Translations under genes and position numbers: made by a program
Notes under the pieces: model-generated
What the model was told of the DNA's origin: nothing
The model's input: the letters and a program-made list of their open reading frames with translations, nothing else
Database searches by the model: none
NCBI RefSeq assembly: GCF_902459465.1
Contig: NC_047081.1
Coordinates: 11,036,001-11,100,000 of the forward strand
Direction of reading: 5' to 3'
Source of the DNA: Asterias rubens
Taxonomy: Eukaryota
Length of the DNA stretch: 64,000 bases
Shown: piece by piece, positions 2,065 through 26,518 of the stretch
Layout of the letters: each line of letters begins with the position of its first letter
How positions within the stretch are numbered: the first letter of the stretch is position 1

Positions 2065-2309
2065 GTGCGCCCTCTGTAGTTTGAGAGCTTCGTCATGTCG
2101 TACTCCCTGACTCCACGAATAACACGTAACAGTTAAACTATAATTTCGTCGAAGAGTACCGTTTGTTGTGATTTCGCAAGGACTCCTCCCCTGTCAGCTG
2201 ACTGGGCTTAAATGCAAAGAGATGATTGAAAGATGAAGGCCACACGACAATCTAAAAAGAGGTATATCTTTCGTTTGGTTATTATATATATACTTTGAGA
2301 GGGGAAAAG

Positions 2310-2682
2310 CAGTTCACTGTCCTGAAGTGTTAAGACATGCCCTTTATTGTTTGCCATCAATATTGACACAGTGACACTGACAGAGTGACCAGTCACTCGG
2401 CGGGCCCCGGCCCTCTCTCAATCCATGTATTGTATTGAGTTGAGAGAGGGCCGGGTCACTCTGTCACTGTCCTGTGTGTCAATTGATGGCAAACAATAAT
2501 AAAGGGCATGTTGGAAAAGTTTCCGTATGGCGCCACCACTTTTTCATTCGATATGAATTAATATAGTATCTAATTTACCCGATTGATATATCCCTTTTTG
2601 TAAAAATGAGTGAAAAAGTGGTGGCGCCATACGGAAAGTTATCCGGCATGTCTTTACACTTCAGAACAGTTACAGTGAACTG
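2310..2682. mobile_element. Long palindromic (fold-back) element interrupted by a MITE
   Basis: The left arm cagttcactgtcctgaagtgttaagacatgccctttattgtttgccatcaat...cggccctctctcaa is mirrored by ttgagagagggccgg...attgatggcaaacaataataaagggcatgt[MITE]ggcatgtctttacacttcagaacag...cagtgaactg. Confidence 0.8.
2513..2644. mobile_element. ~131-bp MITE with ~37-bp TIRs and an 8-bp TSD
   Basis: TIR ggaaaagtttccgtatggcgccaccactttttca / tgaaaaagtggtggcgccatacggaaagttatcc; flanks ggcatgtt / ggcatgtc. Confidence 0.85.
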
Positions 2683-3294
2683 TAACTGTTCAGTCTCAGT
2701 CTCAGATGGTCTCAGATGGTCTCAGTTGGCAAATGCCAAAATGGTCTCTCTCTCAGCTCAGCAGTTCACTAGCTCAGGCTTAAATGACCCACGACACATG
2801 GCCCTCACCACCACCGCATTTACCGTGGTTCCCTCTCCCTACTCCCATCATTTGCCCATGACAAATCCCATTGGAGTACCCTCTACGTTATCGCAACTAC
2901 CTCTCCCCTCTCCCCTCCTGCCAGTGACCACCGCACCAGAGAGTGAAGAGGTGTTTTTGCTGTGGTGCCCTTTTTGCCAAGTTCCAAAACAAACTAAAAT
3001 TTTCATAATGACATCGACATTCTTCTTAATCAAAAAAATTAAGTTGGTATAAGGTCCCATGGATGGTCAAATATTTGTTCATTGTTTTAGGAAAATTTTC
3101 TGGTTGCGGGATATAGAAACTTTACATTGTTCATTCATTATGAAATAAATAGTATCTAAGTTAACCTTAAGCGAACTTAATGAAAAATACCTTTTGTAAC
3201 AATGAGTGGGATAAGTGGTGGCAGGATATGGATTGTTTTCAAAAATTATAATCTTGGAAAGTAACCTTTTTTTACAATTCTTTCATACCTAAAG

Positions 3295-5546
3295 ACTGAG
3301 AGCCGTTGTTGTCAACTTGCCCAATAATAAGAGTGTACATCATTGGACCTCAGACGATGTTGCCGAGTTCCTGCATGCGAATGGGATGGGCCAGTACTCG
3401 GAGCTGTTGTGCATCCACAATGAGATTGACGGCGAGGTCTTGCTGCTTCTCAAGGAGTTGGACCTCCGTCTTCCGCCAATATCCGTCCCCGTCTTGGCAC
3501 ATATTAAGAGGTTGATGATGCTGATCAATCACCTGCAAGAAAGAGAGACGGGGTCGACGCACTTCAGCAACGGATCATCCAAATTAACCGACTACCTAAG
3601 CAAGGAGACCAGCCTAGAGCTGGGTCACATCAGCCAGCAACTGAACGCTTTCAGTTTCAGTGACGATGAAGATTACCAAAGCTCTCATTCCAACCCGCAG
3701 TCAAGACGCTCGTCTGAGCCAAAGTTCCAGCCGGAGTACGGGAAGACGCTTCTCAGTTTCATATACGCGTCGTCGGTGGCGCTACTGACTGCGTTTGTGA
3801 TGACCATCGCTCACGATCGCGTGCCGGACATGACCAAGTTTCCGCCGTTGCCGGACGTCTTTCTGGACAGCGTCCCTAGGATAGAGTGGGCATTTGAGGC
3901 TTGCGAAACTTGCGCCATCACTCTGGCTTCCATGTTTGTAATCGTCTTAGTTCTTCATAAACACAGGTAAATCTTGTTCCCTGTGTACCATTATTGCAAT
4001 AATGACTGCTATTTTCATGATACAAATATGAACCTGACTATTTCGTTATGTAGTGTTGGTTTCAATGAGGGACGACAAATGCTAATAACCAAAATGAAGG
4101 TCTCTAATCCCCAATATGAGGTGATGTTTCTTGTTCATTTGCAATTTATTTTCCGACGGACTAGTGCAATGAAAAGGTAATTGGCACTAAATAAGTTTTA
4201 AAGGCAAACCCTGCTACCACCGCAACAAACAATTAACGACATGTCCGAAGTTCTTCACTCTACCCAATGAGAGATTTTTGGGACACACGTAGGTTGGCAC
4301 TCCAAAGGCTCCCATTTTTAGTCTTACATGGTTTTCTTTCTTTCAGGTCCATAATACTGCGGAGATTCTTTGCCCTGACGGGCTCGTGCTTTCTTCTTCG
4401 TTGTCTCACTATGTTTGTCACGTCAATGTCCGTCCCTGGCAGCCATCTGCAGTGCAGTGGCAAGGTACGTCTATCCTGGCAAACCTCAACTAAAAAAAGG
4501 AAAACAAATGAAGGGAAAAAGCTCAGTAGTTTCTGGAGCAGAATTTAAATGATCTTTTGCACATTGACAGGGATTTCAAATTGAAACTGACTGCTCTAGA
4601 ATTGCAAAGGTTGTAGGTTTGAATCCCACCTAAGTAAAATGCCTGTTGTCACGGGGCCTGGGGGAAAGTACTGAGTCTACAGTTCTTAAGACACATCTTA
4701 TATTGGTAAGAACCCTTATTATATTTGGAGGTGTGTTAACTGTTATATTAATTTCCCCCCCCCCCCTCCTCTCACTGTCGCGCAGGTTTATGGAAATTAC
4801 TGGATCAAAATGGAGCGGGCCTTGGAGATAATGTCTGGCCTTGGCATGAGCGTAACAGGTGTCCATACCTGTGGGGATTACATGTTCAGTGGACACACCA
4901 TATGTCTGACTATGTTTAACTTCTTCATAACGGAATGTGAGTATGCTTTGATCTAGTCCCAATCTGAAAATCTATGTCAAGGAAATGTTCATGACAAAAA
5001 ACAAAAAGCAAACAATTTGCAGGCCAATCAGTCATAAACAATACAGTCAACAATCTGCCTCAAACTTTACCTACACCCCCAAAACTGCAGCAGTACTACC
5101 TTCCATAAAGCTTGACAGAAATAAACTGTTGTAGTACTAGTACCTCCTTGATTGCCTCACAACATCACCGATTATTAGTACTTCATCTCTTTTCCCCGAT
5201 AGATTCGCCAAGAAGTATGACTTACCTCCACACTACCTCCTGGGTCCTCAATCTCTTTGGGGCCTTCTTCGTTCTTGCTGCCCACGAGCATTACTCCATC
5301 GATGTGGTCATCGCATTCTGCATTACCTCACGCCTCTTCCTGTACTACCACACACTCGCCAACACCCACTCCCTCCAACAAGCCGACAGGAGGACCAAGG
5401 TCTGGTTCCCCATGTTCTCCTACTTTGAAGACAAGGTGGATAACGTGGTACCTAATGAGTATGAGTGGCCGTTCTCTATGCCTCGTTTACCGGCACCGAG
5501 CAGACTCTGGCAGAAAAGAAAAGTTAAGAAAGATAAACAAAAATGA
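3295..5546 (+). CDS. SAMD8: Sphingomyelin synthase-related protein (SMSr, ceramide phosphoethanolamine synthase); exons 3295-3966, 4347-4464, 4786-4936, 5203-5546; start exon upstream and not certain
   Basis: N-terminal SAM domain ([10 protein letters not shown]...[18 protein letters not shown]...HIKRL) and SMS motifs PPLPD, LRR...[22 protein letters not shown] and [10 protein letters not shown]. All junctions are GT-AG and in phase (2, 0, 1). Confidence 0.95.
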
Positions 5547-7229: not shown

Positions 7230-7363
7230 GCCCGTTTTATACATCCTGCGAATGCGAAGTTACGAATGTTGACGTCACATCCGTGCAAATTATTCGTTGC
7301 GTCCAAATTCGTGACGTCAAAACTCGTATACGGCATTCGCAAGAAGAGAAGTATGAACCGGGC
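7230..7363. mobile_element. Small MITE (gcccg...tgcgaatgc / gcattcgca...cgggc) next to ccctaa-like repeats
   Basis: Imperfect terminal inverted repeats are visible directly. Confidence 0.6.
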
Positions 7364-9937
7364 AAACCCTAGCCTGAACATCTGACATCACACTTCGATG
7401 CTCGTGAATTGCGGATATTAAGACAGGGGCCCAGTCTAGGCATACCCTAGCAACCCTCTAGAGTGTAAATCATCTAGGGGGTGGGGGTTCGGAGTTGGGA
7501 TGTTGGAATTTTTGGGCTATCCTTGGATAATTTTCTGCAGTATTTCTATCTTGTTTTTTTGTCTTTTCTCCTGTTGTTATGTACATGTTTGTATTTTGAG
7601 TATGTTCTTGCTGTATTTTTATCCGAATAAATTCAATCAATCAATCAATCAATAAAGAGCAGTTTCCGTCCAGCAAACGCTTAGCTGAAACTGAAGCTAA
7701 GCGAAGTGTTTTAGAGCATGTCTTGTACCGTCTGGCAGGCTGCACATCGATGTCACTTGCCGTCACACATCAGGCGGGAAGCAGGTTACAGTGGCGATAA
7801 TTGCTTGCTTGCCTGGTTACACTTTAGCAAAGCTATGAACTCTAGGAAAAAATACCAGACGAGATGCTCGACGGAGTTGTGGAATTCGCAGAGAGTGGTT
7901 TTTGGTTTTCATTCATGTCATTTATTGTTTGTTGTTATGTTGTAATAATGTCTTCTATAGGGCCGTCAGACTTCCACAAATTGGGCTACCCTGTATACAA
8001 AATACTCAATAGTAATCACAAATACCAATAAATTTATGGTCAACCCCAGCTCTTTGAATCATTTAGAGCTTTAACCTTGAGCAAGTTGGCAGCTACCTTG
8101 AGCATGTTGACAAGTTTAATTTCAGGACGACCTTGCCTGCCAAGACGCTCCTTTACAAGCTGCCGTGTTTCCTCCCCGACTTGGCAAGCTGCATTGTTGG
8201 CAATTATGATGAGTAACTTTCCCATAAAGTTTGGCTGTAAGGTTCTTGACCTTGGCAGCAGTGGCGCAGGTTTTGATACCTTTTTGTAGATAATGTTTGA
8301 ATCCCTACTCACTGTGAATGAAGGTGTATATAATTTTTATTTGTATTAGTTTCAGCTTCAGTAGCCGTCAAGTTTTGAGAGAGAGAGAAAAAAAAAGTGA
8401 AAATCATAGAGCAGAGGAATGGTTTCAAAAGAGTCAGCGCGTAAATACATTGTACCCTTATGGCTGTAACGTTTCCCGAGACGAACATTATTTTTGTGAA
8501 ATTGGTTTTACTCGTTTCTCAAAAACTACAGCATCTCAACGAGTAATATTTAAAGCGAAGCTTTCAACCATCATTATCTTCAACCGTGTAAGTTTGATGA
8601 CAATCCGATGGACTTTAAGAATGGTGTCGTACCAAAAAGATCCCAAACTCAAAAGCTATTTAACCGCCGGTAATTGCGGCATTATGTCCTTTCTCGAGTT
8701 ATGTACGCATAAAACACGGAATTGTTTACTTGTTGTGCCGTTGAATGTATAATATACTCGACTCGTTTGTGACGAAGTTTGGCCGGGGACATTCCAACTG
8801 TGTGGAGACATTAATTTTTAAATGTAACGACTTGTCGACAAGTCTAAGTGCGGGTAGCGCAGTGGGGGAGCGGGTAAAACTTGGTCAAAGTTGCTCCCCA
8901 TAAAAAGACACGGGGGCAGTCTATGGGTCAAACAATATCCAGGTTAGAATTGACGTCGGGGTTTGATCCCGAGGGGGGCCCACCCAGTGTTATCCGGAAT
9001 CCGTTCTAAAATTACACAGAAGTTCATCAATTTTCCGCAGAATCTCGGCTAAAATCCATTTTCAAACAAGCGCCCGTGTCAGCCTGACATTAGAGTAGCT
9101 CTCAACATTGTCGAAAGTTCCATGGCACTTTTGAAACCTAATAATTTGTACAACGTTAATACGGACTGGTACTGTCCACAGGGACTAAAGGCCTGCTATA
9201 TTTGAGAACCCTGCTAATGACCCCCCCCCCCCCCCCTCTAACATAAGAAACAATGGGGCGGCCACAGAAATGTATATTTTTTATCTCATATTGGTTTGAC
9301 GTTTCTCATTTTAGATTATTCTGACAAAATTAAAACACCAGCAGATAAGAACCACGCAACAATGCCTTCTTGCAGGAAATTGTTTATACTCCGATTCCAT
9401 TTTTTAAGTCATAACATCTCGACTTGAACAATTGATCTCAAAGTTGACGATTATGTTAATTCCATGCGTATCACGTGCACAGTTGGTACCCTGTACACTT
9501 CCCCCCATATTGTAAAAGTGTTATCCCCTTGAATCAAAGGAAATGAAAGCAACATTATAGCCAAGGTTTGAACATGCCCAACTTTTGGTCTCCTTAAAAA
9601 GTAAGAAACTCATGAGACGGCCTATCAGTTACACGACTTTCCTGAACTGCGCGGGTGATCGAGCTGCACAGTGAATTTCGTGTTCACACTGCGCTGTGTA
9701 TTAATGACACTAGTTTTAAGGTCACAACGAAAGCGAACCGAATTAGTAATAAGGTTGTCCCCAAACTGTGCATAACGTTGTTATAGGTTTGCTGATGCAC
9801 TCCATCACCGCGTGTGTGGATAGTTTTAAGACCGCCTTAGGCTGTAAGGCGCATGAAGGATATTTTAGTATCCTTAGACAGAGGACACGGGGACCAACGG
9901 TGGCTCTGGGGGAAGAACGGAACGTCTTGGCAAGTTG

Positions 9938-12900
9938 ATGGACAAGCCATGCCGGCAGATCTCACCAACATACGGCAGCAGATCATCCCCGGCGACGCAA
10001 GGAGTGATGGCGATAGGTAACGGTCACACCACGGTAATTGATATCGGGTCGTCGGTGGCGAACGGGAATCACGTCCCCATTGGGGCACTATGCACCACCA
10101 ACGGGACGCTGTCTCCGGACGGGACACCACTACCACATTCGGCCCTTACCAAAATCGCAAATGAGATTGCCGAAGCATCGGCTACCATTGCTCACCCCAA
10201 ACCCAAGTTCGAACCGGAACCCTTCAAGACGGTGATGGCCATAGTCTATGGGATGTCAGTTTCTTTCCTATCTGCCTTCACGATCACCTACACACATGAC
10301 AGAACCCCGGACGTTAGCGTCAACCCGCCCCTACCAGATCTTGTTTTTGAACTTGTGCCCAGAATGGAATGGGCTTTCCTGGCGTGTGAAATCTGTATGC
10401 TTTCTTTGGCAGCAGTGAATGTTATCAATCTTGTCATTCACAAACACAGGTGAGAAATGTTATTCACATCAAATTACCCCTTTTCCCCCTTTCCCTGAAG
10501 CAGCTATAGGTACAACACACTTTTAAGGACAACTAAAGACGCCCACAACGCGTGCACAAAGGACACTTCGCTTTATAAACAACGGGGATCTTTTGTCTTT
10601 TTTAGATCGGTGTTTCAATTTGTAAAACCAATTACAATCCCTCAGAAAATAACTGACACACATTAAACACATGAATAATTTTTATTTTGAAGTTCTGTTG
10701 AAAGCCTTGTTTGCCTGTGAAGTATCTCGTGTGACATAATTAGCTAAATGTAAATCAACGGTTGTTTACGTTTATCAAGAATGATTGAAAAAAAACTATA
10801 GTGGACAATTTTGAGAAAGATCTTTTGATTGAAGACACTTGCGTTTTATCTTTACATCTCATAGTTTAGAAATGCTTCACATTATAGTAATTTATAAAGC
10901 TTTGTTGTTATATCAATGTATTTTGTTGAAGTTCACTCGGGCTTATTTCTTCAGCGACAATCAAAATAAACTATTGTCCTTGACGGGATTTCAAAAGTGT
11001 TTACTTCTCTGGGAATTTGTTACTTTAGTGAACGACCTTCCAGACTTAATATATACCTTTGGTCTGGACGTCGCGAGGAAATAAGCGTGTTGACTCTAGT
11101 TACTGCAGTCAGCAAAGTTTGAGATGTCAAGTAGAGTTTTGACGAACTTTGTTTCGCCCTCTCGGGCACCGTCGATGAGCAGTTTCATTCAATGAACTTG
11201 CTCAGAGGCACTGCCCGGTGATGTACACATTTCTACTGTAATTGTCAAAGACCAGTATTCTCACTTGGTGTATCCCAACATATTATGCATAAAATTACAA
11301 ACCTGTGAAAATTTGGGCTCGATTGGTCAAAAAAAGTTGCAAGAGATGTGCCCAACCACTCAAAGTCAATTTAATAAAATATCAAAATAAAACTGTACTG
11401 TTGTCGCCCCCCCCCCCCCTTTCTTAACGCTGTAGAACATATCTTGGGATCAACGATAGCCGGGGAAAACTAATATGCTCATAAATAAAATCTGACAAAC
11501 AAGGCGGCCTTCGCCATGAACTATAACGAGCCAGGATTAATATAGAGCGAAAATAAAAGCGTAATTCGAAACTATGCATACAGACAAGATTTATGAAAAT
11601 AGGAGGGCACTAAAGTCAGGACAGAGGGATTTCTGGAAAGCGCAGCTGTGGTTTAAAATTGAACATTATCGAATACTTTTACAGTTACTATATATACTTA
11701 AAAATGCATGATATTAATAGATTGTGTTATTGTGATCAGCTATCATAAAGGTCATTGCTTTTGAAGAGACTTGATAATTGTTGGCGTTAAAAGTTGGTCC
11801 CATTTAGCTTAGAAAGTGACGGGTGGCTATACGAATATGAAAAACAGAAAATATTTTTAGTAAAGAGTGTGCGTGCCTACATAATGGTTCTGTTTCTGTC
11901 AGGTTGTTGATCATGTCATCATTGTGTTGTACAAAGACAAATGCAAGAAATATTTCCTTAAGTTAATCTTCCCCCAAAAATATAAAAATTGTTTAATCAC
12001 CAAACATAAAACTGCACCCAGTCTGAACCCCGGATTAGTCATACAAGACACGGAATGTTTTGAAAAGGAAATGAACAAGGAAGACCTAATGCAGCGTCCA
12101 TTGTGCCCAACCCGTAATTGGCAGAAAAGTGGTCTGGAATTACAGCTGGCACAAAGCAACCAATTGATTTAGTTCCTATATTTGTCATGATGTTTCCTTA
12201 ATAGTACGTTTGAAGCAAAAAGTGTTGGAAGTGTGTCACAACCACGACGCACATTTTGTTTCGATGCTGTCGTCTATTGTTAAGTCAATTACATCAATTA
12301 AATTCAATAAACTTTTATTTCGGTAATGCCCCCATAACATAATAATAAATGGTGTTTCATAAATATTAACAGTGATAGTTATAAACAGTAGCTAACATTA
12401 TTAATAAGTCAAAAAGGCAAAACTTGGGATTGGGTTAAAGCTTTGCTTTTATACCCTAGCCTACCACACTCTACATGTTTATACGGGTCACAGACCTGTG
12501 TAATCTGTGTCAAAGTAACCCAGAAATGGTTTAAAATAAACTGATGCAGATTGTGACCACAGTTCACCTATTATAACCAAAAGACAGGGAACCAAGCAAC
12601 AACATCTCAAAAGAGTTTATTGCTCACTGCTGGCAAGGTGCTGTACCAATCCCAACAAAAAGACGCACACAAAATAAAAAATAAGGGCCTACAGCAAAAA
12701 GTCTAGACAAACAAACTTAACCTTAACATTCTGGTGACTGACCGGGTAAAGCCCCCCCCCCCTCCTCCCGGCTCTGCACAGTCTCAGGAAACTCATCATC
12801 CTTTCCAACGAGGGTCGGGAGGGGCTACAAAGTTGTTTCATATTATGCTCAATGAACATAAAAATATAGCATGAGTCAGGCTATACCACAAACTAATTCT

Positions 12901-15900
12901 CTTTGAATTGCAATAATTCTAGGTTGTTCTATCATTAATTATAAAATTTGATCAAATGTACCTTGGCGACACAAAGAAGTTACCGGTTTACCGTTTACGT
13001 AGTTTACTTATGTAGAAGCTTGCATTCATTTTTTGATTTTTTTTGGTAAAACAATAGATCACCAAAACGTCACGTAATTGACCAAAAATGTTCGTAAAAA
13101 CACAAAAGGTCAGCGTTTGCAAGTGTCTCGTCATAACATGCTAGCCCATTATTTATGTTATGCTAGTCAAAATGTATGCTATAAACCCATGAAGCGTTTA
13201 GCCTATACGCGCAAATAAACACCTTGCCGCCATTTTGTTTTTCAAATCAGACGCAAACAAGTCGTAGCTAGACGTCACGGGTATAAACAGTCTGGTCCCC
13301 TTATACTGGTATAACAGTGAATCAATATTAAGCTATACACACAGTGTAAGCACGGCCTTGGGGTGCAACCGTGAACAGCCGCATATAGAGGTCGATAAAC
13401 TTCAAACATTGAACCCGAATTCCCCATAAGGCATGTGTATAGTTCTTGTCAAGTCGGATCTGATACTGGTTCACCTAACGATATCAACAGTCAAGTCTAT
13501 AATCTACAAAGTGAAATTGCCACAGAGGGCCAGACAATGAACTTGTCTACTTGGACTTGTATCAATATCCGTCAAAAAGTTTCGGGTGGTGTTTTTGTGT
13601 ATGGATTATTGGGACAATGCATTAACAATCATACCCCACATGGATGTTGACAATGTCAGCTTTCTGACTCTAATTTCAAACTTTCCTGAGCACTGCAGGT
13701 ATGCAATATGAACCGATGTCTTGCAATAATTCACCCATGGGGCACAACGGTGAGGGGAAAGATTGTATATAATACAATAGTACTATATTTTGGTTAGGAC
13801 TGAGTTACGGATTTGTTGTTGGTCACCATCTTGGGTCGATCCCTTTGTCAAGCTTTTCGATTTTATCACAGACTACCCGGGTTTCCGGTATATCTACCCG
13901 GGTTTGCGGTATATTTTGAGTGGTTTATCATTTGGTAGGACCTTAAGATGTACACGTGACCATACAGCTATCCCTATGCGTGTGACTGACTCAACCCTCT
14001 GATTAAATTTCTGATTAGCACTTGGATCGGCAAAACAAAATGCTTTTTTAATGACAGCTAAAGGGGACTAATTGGGTCACGTTTACGGTAAATTTAATAG
14101 CACGCACTCTCGCGCAATCCGATCACAAATTGCCGTCTGCAAACAATCAAACCAAAATGCGCAACTGATCTTCAAAATCCACACTCGGCGACCATAACAA
14201 AAATACCCGTCCGGTGGGCGGATATCATATTTAGTCGTATGAGAGAAATTAAAAGAGGGTCGCCATTTTGGATTGTTGGCATGTAAACAAGAGCACGCCA
14301 TACGTGTCTGTTTTTGTTTGTTCACGCTCACTGCAGACTTGGGTTCGTTACCCCTTCTCTCGTTCGTAAGGCACTTCGGGGGGAACTTGGGGGTCGAGTT
14401 CACTTGTCATGTCTATACGGTGACTCGTCGGGTTGTGTTCTATGAAAGTAGGGCTTTCTTGAATTTCAAATGTATTAGACAGCTGTTGGGGTTAGACAAT
14501 TGTAGTCTGTCAGATTCCAAAGCTATGACATGCATCTCCCCACCACACATGGGTCCAATTATAGTATGATCTTGAAGGCGCGGACAAAATTATGTTTTGC
14601 CAGAATTGGGTTATAATAATAAGCCAAATTACAATGTCTGTGTACTGATACTGTTTCCAGTCGCTAAAGTTATTTGTTATTAGTATTTTCGGTAGTTTAG
14701 TCAGCTTTGTGACTGTCAATTTAAATCCACTAAATATGTCAACTAAATGAAAATGTAGCTGAACAGTTACGGGTAATTGCCAAAATCGCTTGTCTATAAT
14801 GAATTGGTTTCTTGTATAAATGTTTGCTTTTAAATAGTTTGAATTATGCTGTATCTTTGAAAGATTATGGCACTTTATTGCAAGGCAACCTCTGGTAAAA
14901 GTCAGGTCCCGTTTTATATTATAATAATTGATATTCAAGATTGTGAGCACGATACAGATCATAATCTTCATCGCTGTCATCATTATCATCACGGTCTCTA
15001 TACCCGTTGGGATTAACAATAAAGTTATATATCGACCCTAATATACAAAATTACAAAATCTACAAAATGCCAACGTGAAACCCTTAACATCTGGGACGAT
15101 TGAATGTGTCTAAACAGACCCCCTTTTCGCTTGACACCGAACCCGATGTAGGCCTACATTTTACTTTGTTACTTTAGCCTTGACCGAGAAGCTGGAGTTG
15201 AGTTTTCATGTATGTTATTGTGTATTTTGTTTTTCCAAATTGTGTGTGACCTCTACGATGACACGCCAATGTTTCGAAACATTATCCGAAATCCGTGGTT
15301 TGTTTTCCTAACCTCAAACTCTATCCCCTATCTAGCGAACAAGTCACACAGGAGGTTTTAGGAACAGGGTTGTCAGAACATTATAGGGGTGTCGGGATGT
15401 AGAGCAGTCATAAAGATCATTGAAGACCGGGGTTGAACAAAATTATGTAAATCTACCTTTAATGTGATGATTTTTCCCTTCTTTTTATTAATTTCCCCCA
15501 ATTTGAGATTGATCAAAACCTCCATAATTTTGGTTTTCTTCCCTGCACTTCTTTCTTTTTTGGACGTATCACACGTAGACCTAATGATTAATGTTTATTT
15601 AAATGGAGCAATGTGCCCTATACAGGCAGACACTGTGTTTATGTACTGTGGTTAGTCTGGTCCACACGGGGAGTATCCTGACTGCAGTCACCACTATTTT
15701 TAACCCGCATGATTAATACGCAAAGTACGGTGATACGTCATCAGAAAATATAGCAGGGAATTCGTGGAAACATCAACATGAAGAAATATGGCCAACCTCG
15801 GGACAGATTTGGTTTTTTTTTCTGGTTTTTTTTTTTGGGGGGGGGGGGTGGTGGACTTCCGGACGAGATTTAGATAATTGCCCTCAAAGGCCGTTTAAAG

Positions 15901-18900
15901 ACGTAGGCCTACTCGCCATTTTGTATTGAGCATAAATATAATATACATTCATTATTACCAACCTTGGGAAATGGTAACATATGGTCAGCAAAGGCTTGCA
16001 AATCAATTGGTAAAACGACTGGTAAACCTATTTATTTCGGGAAAACGTGCGAACCCGGGTTTCAAAATAGAACCGGTAATTGTCTTCACCGACTGAAACT
16101 CAAGATTCAACACATTTTAAAAAGAAGCCTTAACCGTTTTGTTACGGTGCCATATCAATATACAGTTGTCGATTATAATAGCTCCCGAATGAGCTCATAG
16201 CTTCCTCGTTGAACCTTGCCTGGGGTGGATGGGTCTCCTGCTCTTGTGTGTTTGGGTTGGGACTTTAATACACGGTCAGTCAAACGATTGCCCGCGGGGC
16301 CTTGGATCCGGCCGTGCGTGCGCGTCGATTCCCCGTACAAGAATGCCCGGTGCGGTCTGGCTTTCTGTGCATACATTGACCTCATACACCGGCCCGTAGC
16401 GCCCAATATAGTCGATTTTTTTTCCTTCAATTTGTCTTGAAGGTCTCTTACAGGATTGAGTTCCCCTTCACTCAACATATCTTGACCTGTAATCATGATA
16501 ACCAGGGTTTGCGCATCGCAAAGGTGCGTTGAAATAATCAGTGTCAATATACGCTGTGCTTTGATGGCCCTTTTGTACAATAGTGGGGAAAAGACCTAAA
16601 CATTGTTATTTGTTAGACTTGCAAAATGTTATCTAATATTACCAATTATCATTGATCTCCTATTGACGACCTTATGCATGACGTCATCACGCCGCCATCT
16701 TTAGAAGTAAAGCGACGATGAACCAATGGAAAACGCACATTTTTGTACAACAGGCGCGGCGCACGGATGGACCAATAATAATGAGCAACCTCCTTTAGAA
16801 CTCTAGCCGAGGCGCCCTGAAAACGACATCGGGTGCATAATTACGAAAGTTCACTTTACTTCGTGTTACAATGAAAAGCAAAATGGCCCGACTTCAATCA
16901 TCCCAGTCTGACCCCCTATTTGCCTAAGTGTTCAAAGCAACGTAACATAACAAGGGTTCAGACTTTTTTCAAACATCAGTTTAAATTTCAGTTTCAAAAT
17001 TTAAAACTAACTAGCATATCATGTTGTAAGTGAAGTATGCTTTTAACTTGCGATTTCTCAAGTCAGGGGGGGGGGTTGGCTGAATGCGTGTTGGTGTGAG
17101 ATAGACATTCCAGATCATTAGTTGCCCTTTTGATAACGGGTTTATGGGGTTAGAAATCATCGACGCGACTGATGCGACACGCTGCGAACCCGCAGCGGTT
17201 GCATGATGAGCCAAGACCACGATTGATAGTAACAAGCAACAGCGGCAGCGCCATTTTGATTTGCTCTGTACTGTGTATAGGCCAATACAGGCCTACTATT
17301 TTGGCGAAATTAAAAAGAAGCGTCAACGTACATATTGCTTGAGACAAAAAAATGTTGTATGGAGGATTTAAAACAGAAATAACTTGGTTGGATGAGCTCA
17401 GACAACGGTTGATAAAAAAAGAAACTACATGGCAGCGCCATTTTGAATTGCTCGTGACTGTGTTCAATACAGGCCTACCATTTTGACGAAGTTAAAGATT
17501 AAGCTATTATAGTTTTAAGGTGCATATTGGTTGAGAAAATTTCTGCTATAGGGAGGATTTAAAACAGAAGTAACTTGTTGTTCATGCGATCTAAAGCTTT
17601 TTTTCTAACAGCTTTATAGAATTGAGGGAAATATCAGGTGGATCTATGAATATTAATAAGTTTTTTTTTTAATCCCTACTGACTCCCAAGTTTCGTGTAT
17701 GCACATGGCATTGTAATGAATCATCGCTACTTTAAATGCATACAGATAGCTGTATTTCACGCAGTGTGGTTTTATATAATACTGATTTACTATGTCATTA
17801 ATTAGTATCAAGTGATAAACCACAAGGGAAACTGACAGGCTAAATGTTTTTTTTTTAATTGGGTCGACCGTAGAAAAACTTAATGAGAGCGAGATTTTAA
17901 TCTACTGCGACCTCCGGATTGTTACGTCCATGGCAACTTAGCTAGCCCTAAAACAAGTGTCGCCTGTACCGCCCCCCCCCCTACTTTGTAAATTGTTATT
18001 TGGGGTGCCGTCAAAAGCCATTAATCCTGTAACTTTATAGCCAGGGATCACACCCTATAATATATAGTTTACGATGCTGAGAAGCTTCAGCAGACGGGGG
18101 ATCCCCTTTAAGTTGATGCCACTTTTTGTGTTTGTAACAAGGGAATCTTAATAACTTTGGAATGAACAAATCATTATACAAACATTGCTGTTGTTCAGCT
18201 CAATTTCAGCACCAATAACAATGCTACATCCACAATGCTCTGTCTTTGAATGTAACATCCTTTAAGAAATTATAATATTGTTGTTTCTGAGAGACGAATG
18301 CTGTGAGATACCGGACGGGGAAGATCATGTATAAACTGGATCTCATGTGTTTTAACATTGAACTATACAGAACTGGAAAAAATACATATAGACCCCCCTA
18401 CACAATGCTATATACTGTCGCGATTGAGTGTACATTTTGGTATTTGTTTTGTAAAATCTTTTGTTTGGGGGTATGGGGACTCCTATGGGGAATTAACCTT
18501 CACTTCTTAATACCCATTGTTCTTGTAGCGTTTACTGTTTGTAATAAAGAACTTCCTTTGTTTTCTTTACAAGGAGATAAAACTAAAAGATACACACACA
18601 AAGCGAGTCTAATCGATCCGTAATATTTCTTCTTGTTTTCATTTTAATTGTAAGACAGCAGGAGGAGTAGTGTTCGATCTCTTGTACTGATTCACTCGAG
18701 TCCTTAAAGGCACTGGACACCTTTTGTAATTGGCAAAGACCAGTCTTCTCACTTGGTGTATCCCAACATAAATTATGCATAAAATAACAAATCTGTGAAT
18801 ATTTTGACTCAATTGGTCATTGCAAGAGAATAATACGAATGAAAATTCACCATTGTTGCACAATAGTGTGCTTTGATGCTTCAGGCCTGAAGTCTTTTTA

Positions 18901-21900
18901 TTATTTGAGTGAGACATTACCTCTTTCTCAAAAGACTATCGTGGTAGCCATTTCTCACAATGTTTTATACTATATCAACAGCTGCATTGCTCGTTACCAA
19001 GTAAGTTTTTATGCTAACAATTATTGAGTAATTACCAACAGTGTCCAGCCGTCGATTTCACAAAACTCTTCCTAACTTAAGACTAATCTTATAGGACTTA
19101 GGACGAGTCCCAACCCTGCACTGTAGCATGCAGACCTTAAGATTAATCTTAACTCGAGATAAGACGAGTCCTAACTCTTTGTGCAATCGACCCCTGCTGT
19201 CTTTAAACTGATATTAACATGGTTCGTGTGACACGTGTGTCGGTTTTGGTTTGCAAGTAGGACTTGTGACACTTTACACTGTGGGAAAACAAGACCATAC
19301 ATACTTCAATTGTTTTTGTTTCATTAGGAAAGGAGGTCTGCCAGGGGTTGGAATAATGTTTCATATTTTGGTATCCTCAAAAGGAATGTACTTGGAATCG
19401 TTGGGATAGTACTGCTCAGTGACCTCACTGAATGGGAAACAAAACAGAGACTATAGAAATACGTTTATTTTCATTATTTTTTTTTATTCCTCGGACAATA
19501 CAACTATAACAAGCAGAGACCGTCCAGGGAAGGGCCAAAAATAAAACATAAATGTCATCAAAAAAGATGTGCCCTCCGAAATATTGCTTATAAAAAGGGT
19601 AACAATTCATACATTACACACTCTAAAATTGCAGTGAACATTAAAACACCTCTATTACCAATTATTACCCATTTTACACATTGGGGAAAGTGGCACAAGC
19701 TATAAAGCTATTATACAGATACTTTAAGTCCTTGTTATAAATCTGTTTCGTGCTTGGGATTTCCCCACTAAGGTCCGTAAACGATCGTCTAGCATGTCGT
19801 ACATACATGATCACACCATAGGTCATGATCAATGACTCAACACTTGGAGATTTATTGGTCTAGTGCCAATATCTGAATGCTGTCCTTATTCTTTCATTCA
19901 AGATTTATTAAAAATTCACACGGCAACCAAAGGCTGAATTGAGTGACACCGGGCTGTGGAACATTCCGTATACAATGTTAAAACTTTAAAACCAAATAAT
20001 TAATTTCCGTTTGACAGAAAAGGTGCATGCAACGCCATAAGGAACGTCACAGCAATTTCTAATACTTTTTGCCCATTGAGACAAGTGGTTACTCATCTTA
20101 TTTTGACCTAGCGCTGGGGCCTTACTATTCATTTGGTATACAAAGTAAAACATAGACATGAGGGTACGATTACAAAATTCAACCTCGTGCGTATTATTCG
20201 AAGCCCCTCGCCCCCACCCTGTTCATCTCGGCCTCATGCGGCTCAGAACAGAGCCGCGGGTACGATTATGAGTTACAACCTCGTACATATTACAGGAGGT
20301 CGGCCTTTCAGCTCCATCAATAGCACGATCCCATTAGATATGCCGTGCTGATTTTTGAACTGTGTGTGAACCTTACGGGTGCATCACGTAAATAGAAACT
20401 CCCATAGCAGAGTGTAAAATGCTAATCAAAATTTCACACAAAAAATACTCAGTATTTCAGCACTTTACAGTTAATAGAAAATGGTCATAATTATTCTTGA
20501 ACACCAAATAAAAATACCTCCGCACCGCTGTATTTTTCCAAACGTCCGATCATCAGTTTCGATAAAAATGTCGCTACACGTCTCTCGGCAGATAAGACCG
20601 ATAATTTTAGGGTCATCCAAAATACCTCAAGTTGGAAGTCAACATCAACACACAGGTCACAATTTGGGCACAATTTGTTACACTCTGTCCCCTTTTCTTG
20701 GGCTTCCGTCTGGAATAGAATATTTTGAGTTCCTTGTACACACAAAATTATGATGTGGCCGCGACGCTCTGTTAAGTTTCTTTTATAGTGCGGTACCCTT
20801 GCCTTCTGTAAAACAAAACAACAATAATATACACCCGTCAGCAGATATGCAATCGGTGGCGCGTGTGTAATTAATCGCCCATAAGTATTCTCTGACGTTC
20901 TCATTTTAGTTTTCAGACCACAGTTTCCCAGCAGGTCTGTCATTACGAACCAGGCATTGATGGTCTGCTGATAACTGTTATCCATGGGAACCAACTTCGT
21001 CATGGTTGTGGTCCCATGTGACCAGAATAGTTATAAATAATATGCACTCTCAAACAAGGATAAAATACCGTTGTCGATCGAAAGGTTGGTTTTTGTGGCT
21101 TTGAATAACTAGTCATTTTCTTCACGTTAGAATTAAAAAAAAAAATTATATAATAACTTAATAATTATATAAAACGTTGCCTTGCTTTGGGGTGCTTTTG
21201 GGCTTAAGAAAGCGCCCGTTATGAAATGAATAATATGCTTGGAAATAATATGTATTAAATTAAGAATATAAAATATCTGCACAAAATAAATATGGATCAA
21301 AATTGTGTTTTCTTTTATTTCATGAGCTAACACGGTCCGCCATGTTGTTGAGTTAGCGTTAGGCAAAATGGCGGACCGTGTATAGGCCAGCCAATCATCA
21401 AAATAGATGTATTATAAAAAGTATTAAAAATAAATTCATTATTTTAAGGTATTATATTTAGATTGATCTCAAAGCATTAAAAAATTTAAAATGATAGTTT
21501 CTTGACCCACTTGCAAAGAAGTATTGTAGCAGCTGTCACAGGTGATCACATTATATTACCAAGTGCGATAAAGAGGCTGCTTAAAGTTATGAATTGGTTA
21601 TTCATTCGGATAATATTATTGCGTGTATTCATAGATCGGAATGAGATTAAATAACGCATGGGACCCATCTGCTCTTGAATTCCGAGCGTGAAAAGCGACG
21701 GAGGCGTACGGTGGATTTCACCGGCTAGACGGCTCGGTGTGTCTCCCAGGCATGCAGGACGCTTGGTTAGGTTTCTCGTACTATATTATTATTATTATTT
21801 ATTTGGCCAGTAGCAGGTTATTTCGTGTAATTAACTCACACCCTGGATGTACTTTTTTATGAGGACGAGGATCCGGATCAACGCCATTATACGCGGGGGA

Positions 21901-24900
21901 CGAGGGGCGTGTCAATGTGGGGAGGCGATATTCTTAGAAATGTCAAACCGTAACAAGCCAAAAAGGCTCAGCTCAATCTTAATCTTGCTTCATTTGTTTT
22001 TGTGAAACGCATGTCGACTATTGTCTGATCTGGTATTAATTTAGTACGCAGTAGTAGAGACCGTCTCCGTAGTAGTGTTTCCTGTGTGTGACATGCGAAT
22101 TATGAATACAGATTCCAATGAAGCCATAAGGAGGTCAGACTAATTAGCCTCAACAGCATCGTCATGTCAAAAGAGAACAGAGACGTTTGACACACATTGA
22201 TTTGACGTCACACACGGTTTTTACGTATACCGTCTGCCCTGCCCATGATCTGGCCATTTTGGGATTCAAATTACATGACCAGACGAATGGATTGTCGACC
22301 GCCATATTTGATGATAAACAGCGGAATAGTGCACGTAACTCTCAGCCAATGATTATGCGTGCACGTTTCATACAATATGGCCGTCGATGACGTCATGTGC
22401 AATCCATCTATTGGATGGTGCGTGTCTTACTACGCAAGCTCAGTTCATTTTGAATGAATGAAGTTTGCATATTATATTAAGTTACTTCAGTGTAGTTTGT
22501 TTGTGCCATACTTTTATGTAACACAATCTTGAGGTAGGAGGACTAGTGTTCATTTTACTCTTCAAATAATGTGACTTTACAATAGTAGGTCACACATAGC
22601 CTTGTGCTGAATGATGTGTCAGATTTAGTTGAATGTGTTCAAGCTGTCATGTGATAGGTGATGTACGGAGCCCTGGAAGTGCCATCCGACATGTCGAGAT
22701 CCGGAAATTAATTTACTGTAGGATGATGACAGTTTGTAAGATGATGATGGTAGTAATAATAGTGCCTTCTTATAATAGCGCGCATATACTTCACTCGGTG
22801 GCATATTTTATTCAGTATTTTCCCGCAAGATTTGTGGGACTACGTTTGAATTATTAGACCCGGGTCGATTTCACAAAGATAGTCCTAAATTAGGACTAGT
22901 CCTAGGACTCTCTAGGGGTTATTAAAACTTAAGGGTCCTAAGTTAGGACGACTCGTCCTTTTCTCGAGATAAAACTCTTTGAGCAATCCATACTGCTGCT
23001 TTTGTATGTACGGTTTACAGAGTACTGTGGCGCAACATGCAGCCAATCAAACCAGGAGCACCGGGGCGAACCCCTTCTCTTTCAGATAAGTGCACTGATT
23101 GATTCTTTTTGTGGGTAATTCTTTAAAGGAACACGTTGCCTTGGGTCGAACGAGTTGGTCTATACAAAGCGTTTGTAACCGTTTGTTATGAAAGAGGTTT
23201 TAAAAGTAGAAATGACCCTCACAAATTATGCCTCGTAATTGCGTTGTTCCTTTTACCTCGTCGACTTAAACGGTCGGCCATTTATGTTATGGGAGTCAAA
23301 TTTTGACTCCCGTAAATGGCCGACCGTGTTAGTTCGCAAAGAAAACGAAAACCACGCAATTTGAGGCAAATTTGTTTAGATCATTGTACTCTTCTTTTTA
23401 CAACATCTTTCTAACCATATATATTTTATAACAAACGGTTATAAACGCTTTTCAAAGACCAGCTTGACCGATCCAAGCAACGTGTTCCTTTAAACTGTGT
23501 GTTCCGTGCGTAACGTGTGTTACGTGCAGCTCGAGTGGTTTATCTCAATATGAAAACATCTTAAAGTAACAAGACATTTTTCTGATTATACTTTATCTTA
23601 CGGTATGTCGACACAAAAGCAAGATGCCGTCATCCAGATGTAAATAATTCCAGGATGTCGTCATCATACCTGATTGATGTCATTGTCATACTGTCAATTA
23701 TCCCAACATCTTAACAATTTTGATGGCACTTCCAGAGCTCGGTAGCAATGATTTAGTCAAGAGCTCCTTACATTTTGTTTTAAATAGGTTAACCTTTCTT
23801 AGGTGGCGTGTTTTCTTATAGCTGACAACATTGTGCTCCACAGTGAGTCCACATTCACTCTACGATGTGTTTACAGCGTGTTCCAGATCGCTCTCTCACG
23901 TTTTACATAACTAGAAAAAGAGACATTCCCGAGAAACGAAATAAATAAAAAAAACTCTGCTTGGGTCAAGACGTCAGGCTATAACTAACTTTATTTTTTA
24001 TTTATTTTTTTAAACACAATTGAATTTATTATGTTACAAAGAACTGAATGCACATGCAGAAAAAGTTGCCTCACATTTGTTCTTGTTTTTTGCGAATGCT
24101 AAACGATTTTGTTGTGTATCTTCAAAGTACACAATATTGGTAATTTGTATTCAAATGTGGTGGGTTGATGTTGTTGAATTCATGCCAGGGCGCGTCATTG
24201 TTAGGCGAATAAAAGTTCACCCTTTTCCGTACATTGTCGAAGGATTGAGCCTACCTGCAAGACATTACCGAGACTTTAAAGGTTATCGATTAGTCTCAAG
24301 GAAATACCATGCTCATAAAATGGAAGTTGTAGTCAGTTTCCGTCTAGGTCTACCCTCAAGTGCGCAAAAGTTCATTGAAACCCTATAGCAGTTGAAGACT
24401 GCGTGGCATTGCTTATCTCAATATCTAATCATAAATGTACGGAGGGATAAGCTAACTGACAACAATCCCACTGTTATGTCTTCCGAATAGTCTAGAGACT
24501 GTACTTCACCATTGAGTACCCATGAGTATTTGCACGGGTGGGGTCAGGTATGTCAACCAATGTTATTACTACATGACAGACTAAGGCTCGTTTATGTACG
24601 AGTCAATGGGGAATACCATTGAGACAGCGGAGCAGTCTATGTTGTAAAAAGTCAAGCGGGTAAATGACCTTCCCCTTGCCACTCAAATGTTACACTTTGT
24701 TTCTCAAGCGTATTCTCTTAGAACTATCAAATTATGTATTACTTGCCTTTTGTGTTAAAATGAAGAATTTTAGTCTACATTTCAGAGGACTCCATTATGG
24801 TTATCCCAATAATAGAATGGTGGTTGTTTTGTGGGAACCGAACATTCATGCGTGTTTTCTTTCTCCCCATTTTGTCACCAGACTAATCATCCTGAGACGT

Positions 24901-26518
24901 TGCTTGGTCATTATCGGATTCACTATGACGATGCGGTGCCTGACCATGTTGGTGACGTCACTCTCCGTTACGGGTTACCACGTGCATTGTGGTAGAAAGG
25001 TACAGGCTGAAGAATGGCGTAATTGAACATAAATTATTTCATTCTGCTTATAGGGCGTTTTAGGCTATGAAAGTGTTCGCCATGAAACTAATAATTATGT
25101 TTGGAAAGATGTTATCAAAGTACAACATGAGAGTGAATAACCGTTGGACACCCAGTTTTTACATTTCCAGCAAAGTTTTACAACCCTTTAAACACAACCC
25201 TGTCTAAAACCTTGTTTATATCTGCTATTCTTTCTAGATGTACAACAGTATAAAACATATAAACAATAGTCAATATAAATGCCTACCCCCTTTATTTCTT
25301 GATATTCATAGTGTTAGCCACAGGCGTGTGTGGGTGTTTTTTGGACACCATGGTTTGGGTTTGACGCCATTTTAATGCCTATAATATTGAGAAATAGTGG
25401 ATACTGTATAGGAGTGCGCTGTTTATTTGGTTTTGATCTATTTTACCCCAACCTGTGTCACAGTAGTGTGTCACTATACATTTCAAAAAGGCTCAATTAA
25501 ATATAATAAGTAACAGTATATGGATTCTCAGCTATTAAATTTCCAGCAATTTGAACACCCTTTTATACTAAGCTAACCCCTTCTTGCTATAATGATGATT
25601 TTCTTTCTAGATGTACGACAGTGTCTGGAGTAAGCTTGGCCGAGCTGTGTCCGTCTCTATCGGTATGGGGATGACAGTGACTGGGGCCAGGGAAGAGCTC
25701 TGTGGTGACTACATTTACAGTGGACATACAGTATCAATCACTGCGTTCTGCCTCTTCTTTATTGAATGTAAGTTTCGTTAAAGTTTTATTTAATTTTTTT
25801 TATGATGTTTCACGCGAATTCGGACACTGCCTAATTTTGTCAAAAATGTTAAATTATTGCCAAAAATACATCTTAAACAAAAATGGCCGCTGATGCTGAA
25901 CTAAAAATAGTCTTGGACAAATAGTGGTGCCCACACGTTTAATGTACATAATACTAGGTTTTGTAACAATAAAGCCATTGGGAACAAACTTTACAATCTA
26001 CTCTTTAAAGCTCCTTGCACGAAATCTTGAACCAACAATGACTCCAAGGGGTCATAATCTCGCCCGGAGTTTTAGAGTTTTTTCACGGTGGCTGTCAACA
26101 GAGGTTAAATCTTGTTTCCGGTCGGTTGGAGTATTGGAATTAATTGTGTCCTTCTTTTCCCTCCAAAGATACGCCAAGCAAGTGCCGTCTGATGCACTTC
26201 TTAGTGCGTGTCACCGGCGCATCCGGGATCTTCTTCATCGTAGCCGCGCATGAGCACTACACCGTCGACGTGTTGGTCGCCATCATCGTCACCGTACTTC
26301 TATTTCTGTACTACCACACACTGGCCAACACCAGGGCCTACCTCCACCGTGACCTCTACAAGGTCAGAGTCTGGTTCCCTTTCTTCCACTACCTGGAGGC
26401 CAAGGTAGACGGCGTGGTACCCAACGAGTACGAATGGCCGTTCCGGATCCCGTCAATCTCCTGGCCGCGCTGTCCGTCGAAGCTTTGGCAGAGAAAACAG
26501 AATAGGACCGAGGACTGA
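9938..26518 (+). CDS. SAM-less sphingomyelin synthase-family paralog of SMSr; exons 9938 (exon start 9878 or 9882)-10449, 24882-24999, 25611-25767, 26169-26518; possible extra first exon 8419-8440
   Basis: Motifs KFEPEPFKT, HDRTPD...PPLPD, HKHR|LIILRR...[36 protein letters not shown] and VPNEYEWPF. Intron positions and phases are identical to the upstream SMSr gene (118-nt middle exon in both). The spliced ORF is intact: 378 aa from ATG 9938. Confidence 0.9.
11206..11346 (+). mobile_element. Fragment of the TTAA-flanked element family
   Basis: gtaattgtcaaagaccagtattctcacttggtgtatcccaaca...ctgtgaaaatttgggctc matches 18720-18830. Confidence 0.65.
17240..17580. repeat. Diverged direct repeat, 2 x ~150-190 bp
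   Basis: ggcagcgccattttga...caatacaggcctac.attttg.cgaa.ttaaa...ggaggatttaaaacagaa.taactt occurs from ~17244 and ~17431. Confidence 0.7.
18708..19202 (+). mobile_element. TTAA-flanked non-autonomous DNA transposon (Kolobok-like) with a MITE inserted in its right end
   Basis: TTAA|aggcactggacac ... agtgtccag[insert]ctgtct|TTAA. Confidence 0.75.
19049..19193. mobile_element. PIF/Harbinger-like MITE (gggtcgatttcacaaa family)
   Basis: TIR-like ends ccgtcgatttcacaaa / tttgtgcaatcgaccc, flanked by cag / ctg. Other copies at ~22862-22990, ~28337-28400, 35805-35977, 36937-37057, ~55215-55362 and 63755-63925. Confidence 0.7.
23127..23489. mobile_element. TTAA-flanked palindromic non-autonomous transposon
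   Basis: TTAA|aggaacacgttgccttgg ... ccaagcaacgtgttcct|TTAA; the interior is also an imperfect mirror. Confidence 0.85.

What the first reader, a model, noticed from the sequence alone, without database searches (positions are those of the whole stretch)
8419..26518. Tandem SMSr paralog that has replaced the SAM domain with a low-complexity N-terminus
Seen: identical intron phases and SMSr-type diagnostic strings ([22 protein letters not shown]) indicate it arose from SMSr. Its N-terminus (MDKPCRQISPTYGSRSS...) is S/T/G/P-rich with no SAM signature. Known: the SMSr SAM domain drives oligomerisation and ER retention, while SAM-less vertebrate SMS2 reaches the Golgi and plasma membrane. Inference: an independently evolved, relocalised sphingolipid synthase in this lineage.
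Basis: partly seen in the sequence, partly recalled or inferred. Interest (0 to 1): 0.7.

Follow-up and report, generated by a model that had tools for sequence, protein, structure and literature searches.

The report
Sea-star SAM-less SMSr tandem duplicate
Sea stars carry, right behind their ordinary SMSr sphingolipid-synthase gene, a transcribed and selectively maintained duplicate that keeps the catalytic core but has a disordered N-terminus instead of the SAM domain that holds SMSr in the ER; it is a natural version of a laboratory deletion mutant, annotated in RefSeq but not found in the papers searched.

Summary
Window 9938-26518 (+) encodes a 4-exon, 378-aa sphingomyelin-synthase-family protein. 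It is identical to the RefSeq model 'sphingomyelin synthase-related protein 1-like [Asterias rubens]'. It lies about 4.4 kb downstream of the SAM-bearing SMSr gene (2233-5546) and shares its intron phases.

- **No SAM domain.** The first 88 residues give no Pfam SAM hit and no profile similarity to SMSr SAM plus linker. AlphaFold2 models residues 1-59 without structure.
- **No hidden SAM exon seen.** RNA-derived contigs from four studies start at 9634-9842, run colinear to the donor at 10449 and continue off the stretch. An in-frame TAG lies upstream of the ATG.
- **Micro-exon 8419-8440 unsupported.** No contig joins it to anything.
- **Origin.** A tree rooted on cnidarian SMSr puts the paralogs of Asterias, Acanthaster and Patiria as sister to sea-star SMSr (97/90), on a very long stem. 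The SMSr-paralog-IVD order recurs in A. amurensis and Acanthaster.
- **Selection.** dN/dS against A. amurensis is 0.14, and the His-His-Asp triad is intact.
- **Gene content.** The genome has no SMS1/2-type gene.

Relocalisation out of the ER and the head-group specificity are inferred, not shown. I rate it a new variant of a known kind, of moderate interest. The scan's notes listed only this same stretch.

The parts
2233..5546 (+). Parent gene: canonical SMSr (SAMD8 orthologue), 437 aa. Coding exons are 2233-2261, 3295-3966 (SAM domain, linker and TM1-2 in one exon), 4347-4464, 4786-4936 and 5203-5546. The 3'UTR runs to about 6250.
   Evidence: Pfam SAM_1 (E 1.7e-11) and PAP2_C. Splice sites were read. 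The RNA contig joint 4936->5203 (GT..AG) appears in all four runs, and contigs end at 6066-6253. The gene is near-identical to A. amurensis SMSr P0425.
9634..9937 (+). 5' leader of the paralog. It holds upstream ATGs at 9704, 9795 and 9853 and an in-frame TAG at 9875-9877.
   Evidence: Contigs begin at 9634 (X4), 9644 (X6), 9776 (X1) and 9842 (X5) and are colinear with the genome. The uATGs and the stop were read.
9938..10201 (+). Paralog-specific N-terminal region (aa 1-88): no SAM, S/T/G/P-rich, modelled as disordered except for one helix at aa 69-83 (10142-10186).
   Evidence: No Pfam hit. BLASTP and hhalign against SMSr SAM plus linker give nothing. AlphaFold2 pLDDT is below 50 for aa 1-59 and the helix spans 69-83. 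Thirty-five columns are invariant among four sea-star sequences.
9938..10449 (+). Coding exon A (aa 1-170 plus 2 nt). Homology to SMSr starts inside the exon at KPKFEPEP (aa 88) and covers TM1, the PPLPD loop and TM2.
   Evidence: tblastn gives 54% identity to 3716-3967. The donor GTGAGA lies at 10450, and contigs leave the genome at exactly 10449.
10450..24881 (+). Intron 1 (14.4 kb). No second copy of exon A lies in it.
   Evidence: tblastn with both Acanthaster first exons finds only 9950-10450 and the SMSr exon in the window.
24882..24999 (+). Coding exon B (118 nt, TM3). Same length and phase as SMSr exon 4347-4464.
25611..25767 (+). Coding exon C. It holds the CGDYIYSGHT motif (25701-25730; catalytic His249 at 25725-25727) and a 2-residue insertion just before CGD relative to SMSr.
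26169..26518 (+). Coding exon D. It holds HEHYTVD (26249-26269: Glu291, catalytic His292, Asp296), [14 protein letters not shown] and PNEYEWPF, and ends with the TGA stop.
   Evidence: Pfam PAP2_C E 3.3e-12. Coordinates were checked. The exon plus 3'UTR words are held by the same RNA-type runs at 0.74-0.96.

Best explanation
This is a sea-star (Asteroidea) tandem duplicate of the SMSr/SAMD8 gene.

**History.** The duplication happened in the sea-star stem lineage, after the split from brittle stars and before the Forcipulatida-Valvatida split. The copy evolved very fast at first and has since been held under purifying selection.

**What it keeps and loses.** It keeps the six-helix membrane core with the His-His-Asp phosphotransferase triad. 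The Glu next to the second catalytic His, which SMS2 needs for ceramide-phosphoethanolamine synthesis, is also kept. It has its own promoter and start codon. In place of the SAM domain and linker it has about 88 residues that are mostly disordered.

**Inferred mechanism.** It is still an active lipid phosphotransferase: a ceramide phosphoethanolamine synthase and/or diacylglycerol-producing phospholipase-C-like enzyme, as SMSr is. Without SAM-driven oligomerisation it is not retained in the ER. It would then act in the Golgi or beyond, uncoupled from SAM partners such as DGK-delta.

**Shown:** gene structure, transcription, absence of SAM, descent from SMSr, distribution, and selection.

**Inferred:** catalytic activity, head-group preference, and location.
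For: - **Gene model.** It equals RefSeq protein P0151.
- **Family membership in this genome.** PAP2_C and a fish SMS1 query both hit only these two loci.
- **Transcription.** The RNA contigs are spliced: the GT..AG joint in SMSr appears in all four runs. Paralog contigs of 2810 and 3030 nt start at 9842 and 9644, end on the genome at donor 10449 and continue elsewhere. No contig bridges 6250-9634. The same runs hold exon D plus 3'UTR.
- **No SAM.** Shown.
- **Phylogeny.** One search gives (paralogs, sea-star SMSr) at 97/90, inside echinoderms at 95/90. The paralog stem is 4.49 changes per column against 0.34 for sea-star SMSr. In one search the paralogs lie on the SMSr side of SMS1 at 100/100.
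- **Synteny.** The order SMSr-paralog-IVD is seen in A. amurensis and Acanthaster. Paralog-IVD is seen in Patiria.
- **Not found outside sea stars.** Protein hits from urchins, a brittle star and a hemichordate are SAM-bearing SMSr only. The 10-kb flanks of the urchin and brittle-star SMSr hold nothing more.
- **Selection.** dN/dS is 0.137 (18.5 synonymous against 8.5 non-synonymous differences; binomial p 2e-6), against 0.077 for SMSr.
- **Conservation.** 87 of 124 SMSr-conserved columns are kept, including the triad.
- **Literature.** Removing SAM moves human and fly SMSr from ER to Golgi (PMC2711605, PMC5264588). SMS2 E271, next to the catalytic His, is needed only for CPE synthesis (PMC11663969).
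Against: - No localisation or enzyme data exist for this protein.
- Thirty-seven SMSr-conserved columns have changed. Two of these residues are also conserved in SMS1: Pro201 to Thr/Ala, and Arg306 to Leu. Activity could therefore be altered or lost.
- With SMS1 as outgroup the paralogs fall at the base of all SMSr. The program warned of long-branch attraction, and the AU test of the sea-star-specific placement gives p 0.29, so that placement is allowed but not proven.
- The leader has three upstream ATGs, one overlapping the start, which may lower translation.
- Contigs cannot exclude rare isoforms that bring in another 5' exon.
- Other retention signals could keep the protein in the ER.
Confidence: 0.7

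Rival explanations
1. It is an ancient SMS-family lineage, sister to all SMSr or an SMS1/2 counterpart, that only sea stars retained. It would not be a sea-star-specific duplicate.
For: With fish SMS1 as outgroup the paralog clade branches at the base of all SMSr (96/92 for the remaining SMSr). Several residues match SMS1 states: L137F, F246Y, S294T and I295V.
Against: That tree carries a long-branch warning and also puts sea-star SMSr at the base of all SMSr, against the species tree. The AU test does not reject paralog plus sea-star SMSr (p 0.29). Without the distant outgroup that clade gets 97/90 and the rest follows the species tree. Tandem position next to SMSr recurs in three species, with identical intron phases. 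An ancient origin needs losses in every other animal group sampled.
Confidence: 0.1
2. It is a decaying or non-enzymatic copy: transcribed, but no longer a working transferase. It might, for example, act as a regulatory subunit that joins SMSr oligomers through the membrane domain.
For: The post-duplication branch is very long. Residues otherwise invariant in SMSr and SMS1 are lost (P201, R306). Upstream ATGs lie in the leader. Solved SMSr entries hold six chains each, including the 264-residue construct aligned to the core, so the core itself may oligomerise.
Against: The reading frame is intact in A. rubens, A. amurensis and Acanthaster, and partly in Patiria. dN/dS is 0.14. All three triad residues and the CGD..SGHT and HEHY..D motifs are kept in every copy. 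The membrane core is modelled with high confidence.
Confidence: 0.12
3. Exons B-D are mainly alternative 3' exons of the upstream SMSr gene, so the real product still carries SAM.
For: Phases are identical, so SMSr exon 3295-3966 could splice in frame to 24882. Only one 6-kb stretch could be laid with reads.
Against: SMSr contigs run through their own last exon and 3'UTR and stop at 6066-6253. Depth is zero at 7700-8099, 8900-9099 and 9300-9499. Paralog contigs start at 9634-9842 and carry exon A. RefSeq models in three species start at exon A.
Confidence: 0.04

Closest known systems
SMSr / SAMD8 (sphingomyelin synthase-related protein 1), ER ceramide phosphoethanolamine synthase; solved structures 8IJR, 8IJQ
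   Same: Direct parent by phylogeny and tandem position. It shares the six-helix core, the PPLPD, CGD..SGHT and HEHY..D motifs, the [10 protein letters not shown] and PNEYEWPF strings, and the intron phases. The PDB match to human SMSr has E 7e-83 over residues 85-359.
   Different: No SAM domain or SMSr linker. It has its own promoter and start. Thirty-seven of 124 SMSr-conserved columns have changed, and there is a 2-residue insertion before CGD.
Engineered SMSr-deltaSAM (human and Drosophila)
   Same: An SMSr core without SAM. The laboratory constructs leave the ER for the Golgi (PMC2711605, PMC5264588).
   Different: This is a natural gene kept by selection, with a conserved 88-residue replacement N-terminus and many core substitutions. 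Its location is untested.
Vertebrate SMS2 (SAM-less, Golgi and plasma membrane, SM and CPE synthase) and SMS1
   Same: Same family and fold. Like SMS2 it lacks SAM and keeps Glu next to the catalytic His. A few residues near the active site match SMS1 states: Y246, T294 and V295 (PMC11663969).
   Different: It is not an orthologue. It groups with SMSr, away from SMS1, at 100/100, and has LFLYYH rather than the FWWYH-type string of SMS1. No SMS2 sequence was included in the tree.

Membership tests
Sphingomyelin synthase family (PAP2_C, PF14360) | PAP2_C domain above Pfam's curated cut-off | tested here: met
   Exon D scores 47.2 bits against a cut-off of 27. The genome search hits at 11062168-11062320 with 50.7 bits.
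Sphingomyelin synthase family (PAP2_C, PF14360) | His-His-Asp catalytic triad in CGDxxxSGHT and HxHYxxD | tested here: met
   CGDYIYSGHT and HEHYTVD are read from the window. Both are kept in all sea-star copies.
Sphingomyelin synthase family (PAP2_C, PF14360) | Six-transmembrane-helix core | tested here: met
   The AlphaFold2 model has long helices 95-121, 144-167, 171-197, 242-263, 269-289 and 294-321, mostly with pLDDT above 80. It aligns to solved SMSr over 85-359.
SMSr / SAMD8 subfamily | Groups with SMSr rather than SMS1/2 in a tree | tested here: met
   100/100 for SMSr plus paralogs against SMS1. Sister to sea-star SMSr at 97/90. No SMS2 sequence was in the set.
SMSr / SAMD8 subfamily | N-terminal SAM domain | tested here: not met
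   No Pfam SAM at E up to 1. hhalign probability against the SAM plus linker profile is 0.2%. No SAM-like fold appears in the model. No second SAM-coding stretch is in the window. Transcript contigs show no upstream coding exon.
SMSr / SAMD8 subfamily | ER residence and trace CPE synthase activity | not testable with these tools
   This needs tagged expression and an enzyme assay.
SMS1/SMS2 subfamily | Orthology to vertebrate SMS1/2 | tested here: not met
   Separated from SMS1 by a 100/100 branch. A fish SMS1 query finds only the two SMSr-type loci in this genome.

The most novel reading that the evidence does not exclude
Sea stars, whose genome holds no SMS1/2-type gene, have turned an SMSr duplicate into their bulk post-ER phosphosphingolipid synthase. 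The product could be sphingomyelin or high-output ceramide phosphoethanolamine. The change would have come from losing SAM and remodelling residues around the active site, several of them toward SMS1 states (Y246, T294, V295, F137). That would be an independent origin of a Golgi or plasma-membrane sphingolipid synthase, parallel to vertebrate SMS1/2.
Probability: 0.2. Interest if true: 0.7.

Novelty: new variant of a known kind. Interest (0 to 1): 0.42.

Why it matters
SMSr is thought to act as an ER ceramide sensor, and both its ER residence and its anti-apoptotic role depend on the SAM domain. A SAM-less copy that selection has kept since before the two sea-star orders sampled split shows what the SMSr core does when freed from SAM.

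It also offers a set of substitutions to test for head-group selectivity and output. The question is sharper here because this sea-star genome has no SMS1/2-type gene. It also bears on which phosphosphingolipids sea stars make; the papers I found in the library did not answer that.

Tried and rejected
- **Micro-exon 8419-8440.** No joint at 8440 in four runs. High depth at 8300-8700 comes from repeats.
- **A second SAM-coding stretch in the window.** Sensitive tblastn with the SMSr SAM exon found none.
- **N-terminus as a decayed SAM.** BLASTP gave only a 27-residue match at E 1.0, which is not conserved in Acanthaster. hhalign gave probability 0.2%.
- **C-terminal di-lysine ER-retrieval motif as a difference between the copies.** Asterias SMSr ends KKDKQK, but Patiria, Acanthaster and other SMSr do not. 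I dropped the idea.
- **A second alternative first exon in A. rubens, as in Acanthaster.** Not found.
- **First tree.** It included very long unnamed representatives and left the position inside SMSr unresolved. I rebuilt it without them.
- **One protein search.** It returned only fish SMS1. It served as an outgroup source but gave no invertebrate SMS1/2.
- **Literature on sea-star phosphosphingolipids.** The two reviews I read give no data on sea-star sphingomyelin, CPE or CAEP.
- **Papers not held.** The Kol et al. head-group selectivity paper and the SMSr cryo-EM paper are not in the library.
Full report
**What is in the sequence**

The window is an animal chromosome segment (G000:C21:11036001-11100000, a 417.6-Mb assembly). 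My spliced model of the flagged gene is 100% identical to P0151, which NCBI names 'sphingomyelin synthase-related protein 1-like [Asterias rubens]' (XP_033644341.1). The organism is therefore the common sea star, and the gene is already in RefSeq under a generic name.

The coding exons are 9938-10449, 24882-24999, 25611-25767 and 26169-26518. All have canonical GT..AG borders, and the stop is TGA. The product is 378 aa.

The canonical SMSr gene lies upstream on the same strand. Its exons are 2233-2261, 3295-3966, 4347-4464, 4786-4936 and 5203-5546, giving 437 aa. Pfam finds SAM_1 (E 1.7e-11) in its second coding exon and PAP2_C in its last.

The homologous exons of the two genes match in length and phase. 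They are 118 and 118 nt, then 157 and 151 nt, and the exon before them ends in phase 2 in both.

**Is a SAM domain really missing?**

Homology between the two genes begins inside the exon, at KPKFEPEP (residue 88 of the paralog, residue 133 of the SMSr exon translation). Several tests address the 88 residues before it:
- They are 41% S/T/G/P, against 23% in the core.
- They give no Pfam family at E up to 1.
- BLASTP against the SMSr SAM plus linker gives nothing significant.
- A profile of four sea-star N-termini against a profile of 14 SMSr N-termini gives hhalign probability 0.2%.
- A sensitive tblastn with the SAM exon finds no other SAM-like stretch anywhere in the 64 kb.
- An AlphaFold2 model built on a 42-sequence alignment gives pLDDT below 50 and no secondary structure for residues 1-59. 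It then shows one helix (69-83, ALTKIANEIAEASAT) and a confident six-helix membrane core.

The N-terminus is not random filler, however. Thirty-five columns are invariant among A. rubens, A. amurensis, an unnamed sea-star fragment (P0001) and Acanthaster isoform X1. These include M1, K3, C5, an IGN..T..ID block and the KIA.EIA helix.

**Transcripts**

I laid four runs from four studies on 4500-10499. They are kept as contigs and not recorded as RNA. All four nevertheless carry the SMSr joint 4936->5203 with GT..AG ends, so they derive from spliced RNA.

SMSr contigs run to 6066-6253 and stop. Depth is zero in 7700-8099, 8900-9099 and 9300-9499.

Paralog contigs begin at 9634, 9644, 9776 and 9842 and are colinear with the genome. 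They leave it at exactly 10449, the predicted donor. Two of them (2810 and 3030 nt) carry about 2.2 kb more sequence that lies off the stretch. The same runs hold 74-96% of the sampled words of exon D plus 3'UTR.

An in-frame TAG lies at 9875-9877, upstream of the ATG at 9938. Within these transcripts the reading frame therefore cannot extend into a SAM domain.

No joint involves 8440, so the proposed micro-exon 8419-8440 has no support. Two limits apply. Contigs cannot fix a true 5' end and can miss rare isoforms. Only one 6-kb stretch could be laid.

**Descent**

PAP2_C and a fish SMS1 protein each hit only these two loci in the whole genome. A. rubens therefore has no SMS1/2-type gene.

With fish SMS1 as outgroup, the paralogs of Asterias and Acanthaster fall on the SMSr side at 100/100. 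They sit at the base of SMSr, next to sea-star SMSr, in a tree that violates the species tree, and the program warns of long-branch attraction. An AU test does not reject paralogs plus sea-star SMSr as one clade (p 0.29).

Without the distant outgroup, rooted on cnidarian SMSr, the tree follows the species tree. The paralogs (Asterias, Acanthaster X1, partial Patiria) are then sister to sea-star SMSr at 97/90. That clade lies inside brittle star plus sea stars (91/82), which lies inside echinoderms (95/90). The paralog stem is 4.49 changes per column against 0.34 for sea-star SMSr.

Gene order agrees with this placement:
- A. amurensis has SMSr, then the paralog, then an acyl-CoA dehydrogenase gene.
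- Acanthaster has the same order, with the paralog starting 11.7 kb after SMSr.
- Patiria has the paralog followed by the acyl-CoA dehydrogenase gene.

Protein searches returned only SAM-bearing SMSr from three urchins, a brittle star and a hemichordate. The 10-kb flanks of the urchin and brittle-star SMSr hold no further SMS exons. That flank is shorter than the sea-star spacing, so it is weak evidence.

The best reading is a tandem duplication in the sea-star stem lineage, before Forcipulatida and Valvatida split.

**Is it functional?**

Against A. amurensis, the paralog shows 18.5 synonymous and 8.5 non-synonymous differences. That gives dN/dS 0.137 (binomial p 2e-6 against neutrality). SMSr gives 0.077.

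The triad (His249, His292, Asp296) and the motifs PPLPD, CGDYIYSGHT and HEHYTVD are intact in every copy. Glu291 sits next to the catalytic His. In human SMS2 the equivalent E271 is required only for ceramide phosphoethanolamine synthesis (PMC11663969). The fish SMS1 sequences here have Asp at that place.

Of 124 columns at least 90% conserved among 32 SMSr sequences, the paralog keeps 87. The 34 columns where every sea-star copy differs from the SMSr consensus include:
- F246Y, S294T, I295V and L137F, which match SMS1 states.
- P201T/A and R306L, at residues conserved in both SMSr and SMS1.
- A 2-residue acidic insertion that lies just before CGD.

This pattern fits a burst of change after duplication followed by constraint. 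It does not say what the new specificity is.

**Mechanism**

[quoted passage not shown] SMSr is also reported to bind DGK-delta through SAM and to have phospholipase-C-like activities (PMC11663969, PMC7988496).

By inference, the sea-star paralog is an SMSr-type transferase that escapes the ER and is uncoupled from SAM partners. My estimates are about 0.8 that it is catalytically active and about 0.55 that it is post-ER. Neither is shown here.

How SAM was lost cannot be decided. The candidates are a duplication breakpoint inside the exon with recruitment of new 5' sequence, or decay of a complete copy.

**Novelty**

No paper in the library mentions SMSr or SAMD8 together with a sea star. The gene is annotated but, as far as these searches show, not described. 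It is a new variant of a known enzyme kind, not a new kind.

The scan's earlier notes listed only this same stretch.

Noticed in passing
L012:4223-4801 and L012:10001-10315 (Acanthaster planci): The Acanthaster paralog has two alternative first exons, both ending ...HKHR and both encoding TM1-2. A1 gives the 399-aa isoform X1 with the long N-terminus. A2 gives the 311-aa isoform X3 with only about 23 residues before the conserved core. A. rubens has no second copy in its 14.4-kb first intron.
   Followed up: partly
window 9704, 9795, 9853: There are three upstream ATGs in the paralog's leader. The one at 9853 opens a 55-codon frame that overlaps the main start out of frame. In A. amurensis a 1-nt length difference puts the same ATG in frame, and RefSeq predicts a 406-aa protein with 28 extra residues (P0486).
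   Followed up: partly
window 6100-6700 and 8300-8700: Contig depth in the RNA-type runs is very high (up to about 1e5), with many short joints and loose ends. These look like highly repeated, transcribed elements between the two genes.
   Followed up: no
L016:10391-10498 and 11216-11341 (Amphiura filiformis SMSr): In the brittle-star SMSr the TM1-2 region matches as two pieces about 700 bp apart. That suggests an extra intron which the sea-star and urchin genes lack.
   Followed up: no
L013:1-9726 (Acanthaster planci); L012, L014, L017 (three other sea stars): Gene order around the pair: in Acanthaster an NF-kB-like gene (RHD, ankyrin and death domains) and PLA2G12 lie upstream of SMSr (L013). 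In A. amurensis, Acanthaster and Patiria an acyl-CoA dehydrogenase gene lies downstream of the paralog.
   Followed up: no
window 5529-5546: Asterias SMSr ends KKDKQK, a KxKxx-type di-lysine pattern. Patiria, Acanthaster, urchin and vertebrate SMSr do not share it.
   Followed up: partly
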